The position numbers and the translations under genes were made by a program. From Zootoca vivipara (taxonomy: Eukaryota): a DNA stretch of 64,000 nucleotides. Of the stretch, positions 29,223 through 29,785 are shown in pieces. Each line of letters starts with the position of its first letter. The stretch's first letter is position 1. The notes below the pieces were generated by a model. The model was not told the DNA's origin. It worked only from the letters and a program-made list of their open reading frames with translations, and did not search any database. The stretch covers positions 114,824,001-114,888,000 of the forward strand of contig NC_083277.1 in NCBI RefSeq assembly GCF_963506605.1. The letters run 5' to 3'.

Positions 29223-29559
29223 TCACTTGGTGCTGAGGCGGGTCCCCGGCCTGCGGCAGGCCGAGCAAGACGGCGTGCAGTATCGGGAAACGGGGCGGCA
29301 GCCTGGGCAAGGGGGAGGAGGAGGAGGAGGGCAGCAGCTGAAGCCCCCCCAGGAAGGGCGAGGGTGGCAGCAGGGGGTTGGGGGCCGGCAGCCGCTGGAG
29401 CAGCAGCCCCCCGAGCGGCAGCAGGCGGGAGGTGGGGGGCTGTAGCAGCAGGAAGGGCGGCAGCAGGTGGGGCAGCAAGGAGGCGGGTAGCAAGCGGGGC
29501 AGGGCGGCCTGAAGCATCCAGGACAGCACATGGGGCAGGGCGGGGGGCAGCAGCCGATG
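29223..29559 (-). CDS. Orphan Cys/Pro-rich protein, coding exon 2
   Basis: IGCCPPPCPMCCPGC...CCPTCCRPSCC...STK*; polypyrimidine acceptor ...ccttgctcatgtgtag at 29560; phase matches exon 1. Confidence 0.75.
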
Positions 29560-29640
29560 CTACACATGAGCAAGGTGGGCAGGGGAGGGGGCACCCTCCA
29601 GGACAGGGAAAGGTGAAGGGCAGGGCTGGGAGAAACTCAC

Positions 29641-29699
29641 AGTGTCTCTGCACAGCTGCTGCTGGACCCAGGGAATGGTACCCAACTAGAAAGCCCCAT
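29641..29699 (-). CDS. Orphan Cys/Pro-rich protein, coding exon 1 (MGLSSWVPFPGSSSSCAET)
   Basis: Kozak gccATGG; donor CT|gtgagt at 29640; 81-nt phase-2 intron joins in frame (CT+C = Leu) to give 131 aa. Confidence 0.6.
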
Positions 29700-29775
29700 G
29701 GCCTTCCCCGCTCAGGAGGGAGGATTCCAGGACATGCACAAGGCCGGCAGGCCCACGGGATGCGTCCGGCGGGGC

Positions 29776-29785
29776 TATATTTATA
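29776..29785 (-). promoter_or_regulatory. TATA box of the Cys/Pro-rich gene
   Basis: TATAAATATA in GC-rich context ~80 nt upstream of the ATG, correct strand. Confidence 0.7.

What the first reader, a model, noticed from the sequence alone, without database searches (positions are those of the whole stretch)
29223..29785. Orphan TATA-driven gene for an ultra-high-sulfur Cys/Pro-rich protein between the RARG region and MFSD5
Seen: TATA box, Kozak gccATGG, an 81-nt GT-AG intron that restores the frame, and a 131-aa product with 29 Cys and 35 Pro by hand count (~22% and ~27%). It has CC doublets and CCPTCCRPSCC repeats, no signal peptide, and a candidate ATTAAA at 28928-28923. Known: such repeats typify mammalian KRTAPs, sauropsid EDC Cys-rich proteins and sperm SMCP/ODF1. 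KRTAPs are regarded as mammal-specific and typically intronless, the EDC is a different locus, and in human this block lies close to the type II keratin cluster. Inference: a lineage-specific, convergently evolved disulfide-crosslinking structural protein for scale, claw or sperm tail, outside the EDC. This is the best candidate in the window for an undescribed gene.
Basis: partly seen in the sequence, partly recalled or inferred. Interest (0 to 1): 0.85.

Follow-up and report, generated by a model that had tools for sequence, protein, structure and literature searches.

The report
Unannotated Cys/Pro-rich ORF beside MFSD5
A small, previously unannotated reading frame in a reptile-type genome would encode a protein that is half cysteine and proline, like hair-matrix proteins. 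Its sequence looks strongly coding, but no RNA and no relative were found, so it is still a candidate gene.

Summary
On the minus strand there is a TATAAATA box (29785-29778), an ATG in gccATGG context (29699), an 81-nt GTGAGT..TAG interval (29640-29560) and an ORF ending at TGA 29225-29223. The joined model is 131 aa with 29 Cys and 35 Pro.

For a real coding sequence:
- The core 29260-29560 has the strongest 3-base periodicity in the 64-kb window, above the MFSD5 CDS.
- All 27 TGC triplets share one phase.
- It is neither a tandem array nor a CpG island.
- TATAAA and a consensus donor sitting on the first in-frame stop are each rare by chance.

Against:
- All three minus-strand frames are open.
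- The "intron" is a decayed, out-of-frame copy of the coding repeat.
- An upstream ATG was overlooked.
- TGC:TGT is 27:1.
- Three RNA runs (about 6% of each read, tissue unknown) put no reads on it.
- The genome's NCBI proteome is in the searched collection, yet holds no such protein, and 1.84 billion representatives gave no hit.
- Pfam KRTAP models do not match.

Verdict: a plausible lineage-restricted gene or proto-gene that is KRTAP-like in composition only. I put about 0.42 on it being functional. Cross-species conservation could not be tested. RARG could not be found in the window.

The parts
29778..29785 (-). TATAAATA box, 86 nt upstream of the model's ATG. The transcription start is inferred at about 29755.
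   Evidence: Read directly. TATAAA occurs 55 times on both strands of 64 kb (0.043 per 100 nt per strand), and only 2 of these lie in surroundings of at least 55% GC. No AP-1 site, CCAAT box, GC box or Inr at the expected start was found.
29712..29735 (-). Upstream ATG with a 7-codon uORF (MSWNPPS, stop).
29641..29699 (-). Model exon 1, coding part: ATG in aaggccATGG context, 19 codons plus 2 nt (MGLSSWVPFPGSSSSCAET). There is no hydrophobic stretch, so no signal peptide is apparent.
   Evidence: No period-3 signal here. Unspliced, the ORF stops after 20 codons.
29560..29640 (-). Hypothetical 81-nt intron (act|GTGAGT ... cttgctcatgtgtag|C). It removes the in-frame TGA at the donor and contains ATG 29567.
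   Evidence: It has the only GTRAGT-type donor among the GT sites tested, but 14 of 87 GT..AG pairs of 60-400 nt also keep the frame. No joint was seen in the RNA runs.
29569..29625 (-). Decayed copy of the coding repeat unit inside the 'intron'. It is 70% identical to 29489-29545, and the neighbouring copy lies 44 nt away (not a multiple of 3), so it is out of frame.
   Evidence: family D2. In frame 2 it reads ..QPCPSPFPVLEGAPSP...
29223..29559 (-). Model exon 2: 1 nt plus 111 codons plus TGA. It has 28 Cys (nine CC doublets and ten singles), 33 Pro, no D, E, N or Q, and one K.
29260..29560 (-). Core with coding-type 3-base periodicity, the strongest in the window.
   Evidence: 120-nt profile up to 5.5; 336-nt value 9.9. 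TGC is 27/27 in one phase. There is no dominant tandem unit: the highest autocorrelation is 0.43 against a background of 0.33. TRF finds only weak 15- and 27-nt pairs. CpG observed/expected is 0.33-0.54 against 0.40 for the whole window.
29116..29222 (-). After the stop, a Cys/Pro-like motif continues in another frame (RPCPPGCPSPSD...PPPCPKQQ*). It ends at a donor-like aca|GTAAGT at 29120/29119. This may be a relic of a longer ORF, or part of the 3' UTR.
28923..28928 (-). ATTAAA, the candidate poly(A) signal, about 295 nt after the stop.
   Evidence: It is the only AATAAA or ATTAAA between 29230 and 28500 on this strand.

Best explanation
A lineage-restricted, so far unannotated small gene (or young proto-gene) on the minus strand. 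It would be transcribed from a TATA-box promoter at about 29755 and end near the ATTAAA at 28928. It would encode an intracellular, intrinsically disordered protein of about 114-131 aa, roughly half Cys plus Pro.

Inferred mechanism: in a cell type that hardens as it dies or matures (cornifying keratinocytes of scale or claw, or a sperm accessory structure), the many CC doublets form intermolecular disulfides with keratins or with each other, making a cross-linked matrix. This is how mammalian high-sulfur KRTAPs and sauropsid Cys-rich EDC proteins are thought to work.

Shown: the ORF, its signals, its composition, its coding-type periodicity, its single-copy state, and the lack of annotation or relatives.

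Inferred: transcription, the splice, the frame, the tissue and the cross-linking role.
For: - The period-3 power of the core is the highest in the window and exceeds the MFSD5 CDS.
- All 27 TGC triplets share one phase, although the spacing between CC doublets is irregular (4-17 codons).
- There is no dominant repeat unit.
- The high GC is not a CpG island.
- The Cys-frame ORF brackets the periodic core tightly.
- Synonymous codon usage of this frame fits local genes (+0.22 bit per codon), whereas the 253-aa plus-strand ORF does not (-0.12).
- A canonical TATAAATA lies 86 nt upstream, with a chance rate of about 0.04 per 100 nt.
- A GTGAGT donor sits exactly on the first in-frame stop, and the ATG has a good context.
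- An ATTAAA lies downstream.
- DNA depth is single-copy, and an independent contig matches with 0 differences.
- The nearest clusters by language-model features include KRTAP5-8-like at 0.88, which is a lead only.
- Low-complexity skin genes with TATA promoters are a known kind (PMC11431283).
Against: - There is no read and no 29641/29559 joint in three RNA-seq runs of this species. About 7.5 million reads were sampled from each, and the tissue is unknown.
- Five small probable-RNA runs hold next to none of its words.
- This genome's NCBI proteins are in the searched collection, because MFSD5 is found exactly. None of five versions of the ORF is there.
- Neither search returned any hit. The control shows that a copy would have scored E 1e-58.
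- All three frames of the strand are open.
- TGC:TGT is 27:1, more skewed than the local usage of 0.76 (p about 0.005). Pro codons, by contrast, are CCT 13, CCC 12, CCG 5 and CCA 3. Selection on the protein alone does not explain the pattern.
- The 'intron' and the stretch after the stop carry out-of-frame degenerate copies of the motif.
- There is an upstream ATG.
- No other promoter element was found.
- 14 of 87 GT..AG pairs keep the frame.
Confidence: 0.42

Rival explanations
1. Non-genic low-complexity DNA. On this reading it is a pyrimidine-rich, GC-rich, cryptically simple stretch built from triplet-type motifs (CTGC, CCN, (CCT)n). It happens to be open in all frames, and the TATA, ATG and GT..AG are picked out after the fact. 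It is never translated.
For: - All three minus-strand frames and one plus-strand frame are open.
- Triplet microsatellites abound around it: (AGG)7 inside, with (CAA)n, (ACA)14 and (GGA)7 nearby.
- TGC is nearly invariant at all three positions. No single frame explains that, and it points to a DNA-level process.
- The plus strand carries GGGCAGG-type motifs.
- There are no RNA reads, no annotation and no relatives.
- 16% of GT..AG pairs keep the frame.
Against: - There is no dominant unit and no long runs apart from (CCT)7. The highest autocorrelation is 0.43, and TRF scores are weak.
- Two-unit TGCTGC doublets are too short for slippage (general knowledge).
- The phase is kept over about 300 nt across irregular spacers.
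- The periodicity is stronger than in a true CDS.
- TATA and a consensus donor at the stop are each events of a few percent.
- Codon usage fits local genes.
Confidence: 0.28
2. A decaying relic of a once longer Cys/Pro-rich gene. The edges have frame-shifted: the 5' repeat copy now lies in the 'intron', and the 3' CP-motif tail now lies in another frame. The central ORF survives by chance or is recently dead.
For: - Copy 29569-29625 is 70% identical to an exon-2 unit, but its neighbour lies 44 nt away, so it is out of frame.
- After the stop the motif continues in frame 2 (RPCPPGCPSPS..PPPCPKQQ*).
- No expression is seen and it is not annotated.
Against: - The 336-nt core has no stop and no frameshift, although its internal units are only 63-78% alike.
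- The start context and the TATA box are intact.
- No parent or paralogue is seen in the window or among known proteins.
Confidence: 0.15
3. An exon or UTR of another transcript read in a different frame. Examples are an Ala/Pro-rich or Leu/Pro-rich internal exon from the acceptor at 29560 to the donor-like aca|GTAAGT at 29120/29119, or an upstream non-coding exon of the gene lying downstream on this strand.
For: - Frames 1 and 2 are open from that acceptor to that donor.
- GTAAGT at 29119-29114 is a perfect donor core.
- Frame 2 scores +0.24 bit per codon on synonymous usage.
Against: - No neighbouring coding exons, no Pfam match in any frame even at E 10, and no RNA.
- It is not a CpG island, unlike typical Ala/Pro-rich exons.
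- A protein of 25% Leu and 25% Pro has no known counterpart (my own knowledge).
- The period-3 signal ends at about 29260, well before that donor.
- Not tested: a protein search with frames 1 and 2.
Confidence: 0.1

Closest known systems
Mammalian high/ultrahigh-sulfur keratin-associated proteins (KRTAP4/5/9/10 type)
   Same: It is small and has no signal peptide. It is more than 20% Cys, with CC doublets separated by short P/S/R/T spacers (for example CCRPSCC). It is low-complexity and presumably disordered. The nearest named cluster by language-model features is 'KRTAP5-8-like' (0.88).
   Different: It gives no match to Pfam Keratin_B2 or Keratin_B2_2 even at E 10 and no HMMER hit to any protein. 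The host is a sauropsid, whereas KRTAPs are regarded as mammal-only (PMC11816140). The locus is next to MFSD5 and is a single copy, not a tandem cluster. It is much richer in Pro (27%).
Sauropsid single-coding-exon EDC genes for Cys-rich proteins (EDCRP, squamate EDPCCC)
   Same: It has a canonical TATA-box promoter, a short 5' exon followed by the main coding exon, and an extremely biased Cys/Pro composition. The presumed role is disulfide cross-linking (PMC11431283; PMC11816140).
   Different: It is not in an EDC setting; its neighbours are MFSD5, a claudin-like ORF and the start of separase. The 5' exon would be coding in the model. It has no PCCC motif (no CCC at all), no Q and a single K, so it lacks the transglutamination sites that are conserved in EDPCCC. 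No AP-1 site was found. Some sauropsid corneous beta-protein genes do lie outside the EDC, so location alone is not decisive.
Sperm mitochondria-associated cysteine-rich protein (SMCP) and similar sperm Cys/Pro-rich proteins
   Same: It is a small Cys/Pro-rich protein with CCP-type repeats and no signal peptide. This rests on my own knowledge and was not tested against a sequence here.
   Different: No HMMER hit to any protein in 1.84 billion representatives. SMCP is Q/K-rich, and this ORF has no Q. No testis data were available.

Membership tests
KRTAP (mammalian keratin-associated proteins, high-sulfur) | Sequence match to the family models (Pfam Keratin_B2 PF01500 or Keratin_B2_2 PF13885) or to known members | tested here: not met
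   hmmscan found no family at E up to 10. phmmer and the word-index search found no protein at all. The control shows the search was sensitive down to about 50% colinear identity.
KRTAP (mammalian keratin-associated proteins, high-sulfur) | Single-exon gene | tested here: inconclusive
An intronless 114-aa ORF from ATG 29567 also exists. No RNA was available to decide.
KRTAP (mammalian keratin-associated proteins, high-sulfur) | Mammalian, in tandem clusters (within the type I keratin cluster and a few other loci) | tested here: not met
   The MFSD5 next door clusters with sauropsid proteins. There is no paralogue in 64 kb and depth is single-copy.
KRTAP (mammalian keratin-associated proteins, high-sulfur) | More than 16-30% Cys with repeated CC-containing short motifs | tested here: met
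   22% Cys and nine CC doublets.
[quoted passage not shown] | Located in the EDC | tested here: not met
No S100 or EDC gene was seen.
[quoted passage not shown] | TATA-box promoter, non-coding exon 1, whole CDS in exon 2 (PMC11431283) | tested here: inconclusive
   The TATA box is present. A 5' exon and a short intron are possible, but that exon holds the best ATG. No AP-1 site was found and no RNA was seen.
[quoted passage not shown] | Conserved Q and K residues for transglutamination; PCCC motifs in EDPCCC | tested here: not met
   0 Gln, 1 Lys, and no CCC triplet.
Expressed protein-coding gene (any family) | Transcript with the predicted start, junction and end | tested here: not met
   Zero depth over 28837-30172 and no joint in three RNA runs, about 6% of each read. 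The tissue is unknown, so this does not show absence.
Expressed protein-coding gene (any family) | Reading frame kept in related species | not testable with these tools
The single sequencing-run run found only this species.

The most novel reading that the evidence does not exclude
A sauropsid has evolved, outside the EDC and outside any keratin cluster, its own KRTAP-like disulfide-matrix gene. It may have arisen de novo from pyrimidine-rich triplet-type DNA, with a former coding repeat unit turned into an intron. That would be an independent third origin of ultra-high-sulfur matrix proteins, besides mammalian KRTAPs and sauropsid EDC proteins, caught at a young stage.
Probability: 0.2. Interest if true: 0.7.

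Novelty: new variant of a known kind. Interest (0 to 1): 0.42.

Why it matters
Cys-rich matrix proteins are held to have arisen independently in mammals (KRTAPs) and sauropsids (EDC genes such as EDCRP and EDPCCC).

A functional gene of this kind at a third, unrelated locus would be a further case of convergence. Because decayed repeat copies flank it, it could also be a rare view of how such low-complexity genes are born, or how they die.

It would also show that automatic annotation misses such genes even outside the EDC.

If it is not expressed, it is a warning example. A GC-rich stretch built on triplet motifs can out-score true genes on periodicity and still carry a TATA box, a Kozak ATG and a GT-AG pair.

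Tried and rejected
Searches and checks that found nothing:
- Pfam on exon 2 and on the other three long ORFs, at E 0.1 and at E 10: nothing.
- The search for homologous proteins on exon 2 at E 1e-3 and again at E 10: 605 word-sharing candidates, none scored.
- phmmer against 1.84 billion representatives: 0 hits. A control showed this is not a filter artefact.
- Exact look-up of five ORF versions: none is in the collection.
- Rfam on 27500-31500: nothing.
- tblastn of exon 2 against the window without low-complexity filtering: no paralogue, only compositional noise.
- Read laying on 27000-32000 with three RNA runs: reads only on high-copy repeats, and no joint.
- Full-text search for the motif CCPTCCRPSCC: 0 papers. 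MFSD5 + RARG + cysteine-rich: one irrelevant paper.
- Earlier scan notes: nothing on this kind of gene.
- Motif scans for RARG exons in six frames: none found.

Explanations rejected:
- CpG-island promoter: CpG observed/expected is 0.33-0.54.
- Classical minisatellite: no dominant period.
- Retrocopy: no A-run after the ATTAAA, and it has its own TATA box.
- Transposon capture: there are no terminal inverted repeats around the single-copy block. The flanking high-copy pieces are microsatellite plus SINE-like sequence.
- A second intron linking the Cys frame to the 3' tail: no acceptor fits.
- GC3 as a way to pick the frame: MFSD5 itself has GC3 of 0.75, so it does not discriminate.

Not run:
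- No search or fold was run on the joined exon 1 + exon 2 protein. The exons were searched by reference, and exon 1 is too short to search. The joined reading was used only inside scripts to count residues and test frames. It was not printed or saved.
- The third homologous-protein search (frames 1 and 2) and structure prediction were not spent. A disordered low-complexity chain would give no usable model.

Full report
**What is there.**

- TATAAATA at 29785-29778.
- ATG at 29699 in the context aaggccATGG.
- 59 coding nt up to 29641.
- An 81-nt interval at 29640-29560, starting GTGAGT and ending TAG.
- 337 nt from 29559 to the TGA at 29225-29223.
- ATTAAA at 28928-28923.

The joined reading has 131 codons, with 29 Cys and 35 Pro. 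It was counted inside a script only. It was not printed, saved, searched or folded, and all searches used exon 2 by reference.

Exon 2 reads IGCCPPPCPMCCPGC... It has nine CC doublets and ten single Cys, no D, E, N or Q, and one K.

**Corrections to the observation.**

- The ATG and exon 2 are in the same frame, and 81 is a multiple of 3. The interval therefore does not restore a frame. It removes an in-frame TGA that overlaps the donor.
- CCPTCCRPSCC occurs once.
- An upstream ATG at 29735 opens a 7-codon uORF between the TATA box and the model's ATG.
- ATG 29567 gives an intronless 114-aa alternative.
- All three minus-strand frames and one plus-strand frame are open (ORFs of 331, 137, 123 and 253 aa), so ORF length proves nothing here.
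- I could not find any RARG exon in the window. Six-frame motif scans and a reading of the ORFs found none.
- MFSD5 is confirmed at 46511-47866 on the plus strand (Pfam MFS_5, E 2e-85).

**Is it more than chance?**

Several independent features say the core is, or recently was, coding sequence.

1. Periodicity. Over 336-nt windows, 29233-29568 has the highest 3-base periodicity of the whole 64 kb, at 9.9. The median is 0.70 and the 99th percentile 5.3. The bona fide MFSD5 CDS has a mean of 5.3 and a maximum of 8.3. The other top windows are also the known or likely CDSs. The signal is confined to about 29260-29560.
2. Phase. All 27 TGC triplets lie in one phase. Yet the CC doublets are 4 to 17 codons apart, and there is no dominant repeat period. 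Gapless autocorrelation peaks at 0.43 against a compositional background of 0.33. TRF sees only two weak pairs, of 15 and 27 nt. This is not a minisatellite.
3. Base composition. The 73% GC is not a CpG island. CpG observed/expected is 0.33-0.54, against 0.40 for the whole window. The composition therefore comes from the codon-like content, not from a promoter island.
4. Codon usage. Measured against four CDSs of this window, synonymous usage is better than uniform for minus frame 0 (+0.22 bit per codon) and frame 2 (+0.24). It is weaker for frame 1 (+0.12). It is negative for the 253-aa plus-strand ORF (-0.12).
5. Signals.
   - TATAAA occurs at 0.043 per 100 nt per strand, and only twice in GC-rich surroundings.
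   - The only GTRAGT-type donor in the stretch sits exactly on the first in-frame stop.
   - The ATG context is good.
6. Copy number. DNA depth is single-copy (about 13-16). An independent 1,416-nt contig matches 28708-30091 without a difference, so the frame is not an assembly slip.

**What speaks against a working gene.**

- *Transcription.* Three RNA-seq runs of the same species label put no read on 28837-30172 and showed no joint. About 7.5 million reads were sampled from each, roughly 6% of the run. Their few reads lie on the high-copy repeats at 28.5-28.8 kb, 30.17-30.5 kb and 31.95 kb. The tissue is unknown, and I could not calibrate against a neighbouring gene because only one call was allowed. 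This bounds expression in those samples only. Five small probable-RNA runs hold next to none of the stretch.
- *Annotation.* This genome's own MFSD5 is in the protein collection from NCBI and UniRef, on a 123.6-Mb record, in a cluster of sauropsid proteins (Pogona, turtles, elapid snakes, birds). The genome therefore has a public annotation. None of five versions of the ORF is in the collection. Exon 2 finds nothing in the 5.8-billion-cluster search at E 1e-3 or at E 10. It also finds nothing in 1.84 billion representatives read by phmmer.
- *Search control.* At the same database size, the sequence itself, the sequence embedded in a longer protein, and copies with up to 50% random substitutions score E 1e-58 to 1e-16. 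Shuffled copies score nothing. So no annotated protein anywhere is a colinear relative. Orthologues with many indels could still be missed.
- *Family models.* Pfam's KRTAP models do not match, even at E 10.
- *Codon pattern.* TGC:TGT is 27:1, where local usage is 0.76 (p about 0.005). Pro codons in the same frame are CCT 13, CCC 12, CCG 5 and CCA 3. In each of the three frames one base of the invariant TGC is a synonymous site. Protein-level selection alone therefore cannot explain the pattern, and some DNA-level process or recent origin contributes.
- *Decayed edges.* The 'intron' contains a copy (29569-29625) of an exon-2 unit (29489-29545) at 70% identity. The neighbouring copy lies 44 nt away, which is not a multiple of 3. 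After the stop, the motif goes on in another frame (RPCPPGCPSPS...PPPCPKQQ*) up to a donor-like aca|GTAAGT at 29120/29119. The Cys/Pro array is therefore longer than the ORF and is decayed and frame-shifted at both ends.
- *Intron statistics.* 14 of 87 GT..AG pairs of 60-400 nt would also keep the frame to the native stop.
- *Promoter.* No AP-1, CCAAT, GC-box or Inr element accompanies the TATA box.

**Weighing.**

The periodicity, the phase-keeping across irregular spacers, the TATA box and the donor placed on the stop are together hard to get from neutral DNA. The missing RNA, the missing annotation and the decayed edges keep a dead or never-functional reading alive. My odds:

| Reading | Odds |
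|---|---|
| Functional lineage-restricted gene or proto-gene in the Cys frame | 0.42 |
| Non-genic triplet-type low-complexity DNA | 0.28 |
| Decaying relic of a longer Cys/Pro-rich gene | 0.15 |
| Exon or UTR of something else, in another frame | 0.10 |
| Other | remainder |

**How it would work (inferred).**

It has no signal peptide, no acidic residues, 22% Cys (mostly as CC doublets) and 27% Pro. That describes a disordered intracellular chain. Its likely job is to be oxidised into a disulfide network around keratin filaments or another scaffold as a cell hardens.

With no Q and one K, it would not be a transglutaminase substrate. This differs from the squamate EDPCCC proteins, which keep Q and K (PMC11431283).

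**Comparison with known kinds.**

It works like a high-sulfur KRTAP or a Cys-rich SEDC protein, but it is a member of neither by the tests possible here.

| Family | Fails on | Meets |
|---|---|---|
| KRTAP | Pfam models; taxon (KRTAPs are held to be mammal-only, PMC11816140); cluster test | Composition |
| SEDC | Location; Q/K and PCCC tests | TATA-box promoter; a short 5' exon is possible but unproven |

Automatic annotations do label compositionally similar proteins 'KRTAP-like' in non-mammals (PMC10029157), and some sauropsid corneous beta-protein genes lie outside the EDC. A skin-protein gene at an odd locus is therefore not unheard of.

By language-model features, the nearest clusters are unnamed (0.89) and 'KRTAP5-8-like' (0.88). 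All are below the 0.9 level, so they are leads only.

**Limits.**

- No vertebrate genome collection was on hand, so the key test could not be run: is the frame kept in relatives?
- The one read-laying run and the one sequencing-run run are spent.
- Frames 1 and 2 were not searched against proteins.

**Verdict.**

This is a credible but unproven orphan gene, KRTAP-like in make-up only. It is worth one targeted RNA check and one synteny check.

Noticed in passing
window 54568-55563 (+): A 332-codon open frame between MFSD5 and the start of separase matches Pfam Claudin_2 (PMP-22/EMP/MP20/claudin) at E 1e-10. No such gene lies there in human, as far as I know. The listed start is a bacterial-code TTG, so the real start is unknown. 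The exact sequence is not in the protein collection.
   Followed up: partly
window 30173-30506, 28503-28836, 31843-32000: These are very high-copy elements. Word depth reaches about 172,000, against about 13 for single-copy DNA. They also attract the only RNA reads. The one at 30.17-30.45 kb looks like a SINE with a (TAAA)n tail followed by (ACA)14. It sits about 400 nt upstream of the candidate's TATA box.
   Followed up: no
window 29114-29120 (-): A perfect donor core, aca|GTAAGT, lies about 105 nt after the candidate's stop. Two other frames are open from the acceptor at 29560 to this point.
   Followed up: partly
window 28464-29054 (-): A 196-codon ATG ORF ends in a run of 12 Cys. The run is just the translated (CAA)n/(AGC)n microsatellite on the other strand. 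It is an example of how triplet repeats mimic Cys-rich coding here.
   Followed up: no
window 15001-16250, 21701-22050, 23301-25200: These are CpG-island-like segments (GC above 0.55, observed/expected above 0.6) downstream of the candidate on the minus strand. They may be promoters or first exons of the next gene, but no RARG-type peptide was recognisable in them.
   Followed up: partly
window 46511-47866 (+): MFSD5 (molybdate-anion transporter) is intact as a single 452-codon frame. It is identical to a protein already in NCBI and UniRef, and its 90% cluster spans lizards, snakes, turtles and birds.
   Followed up: yes
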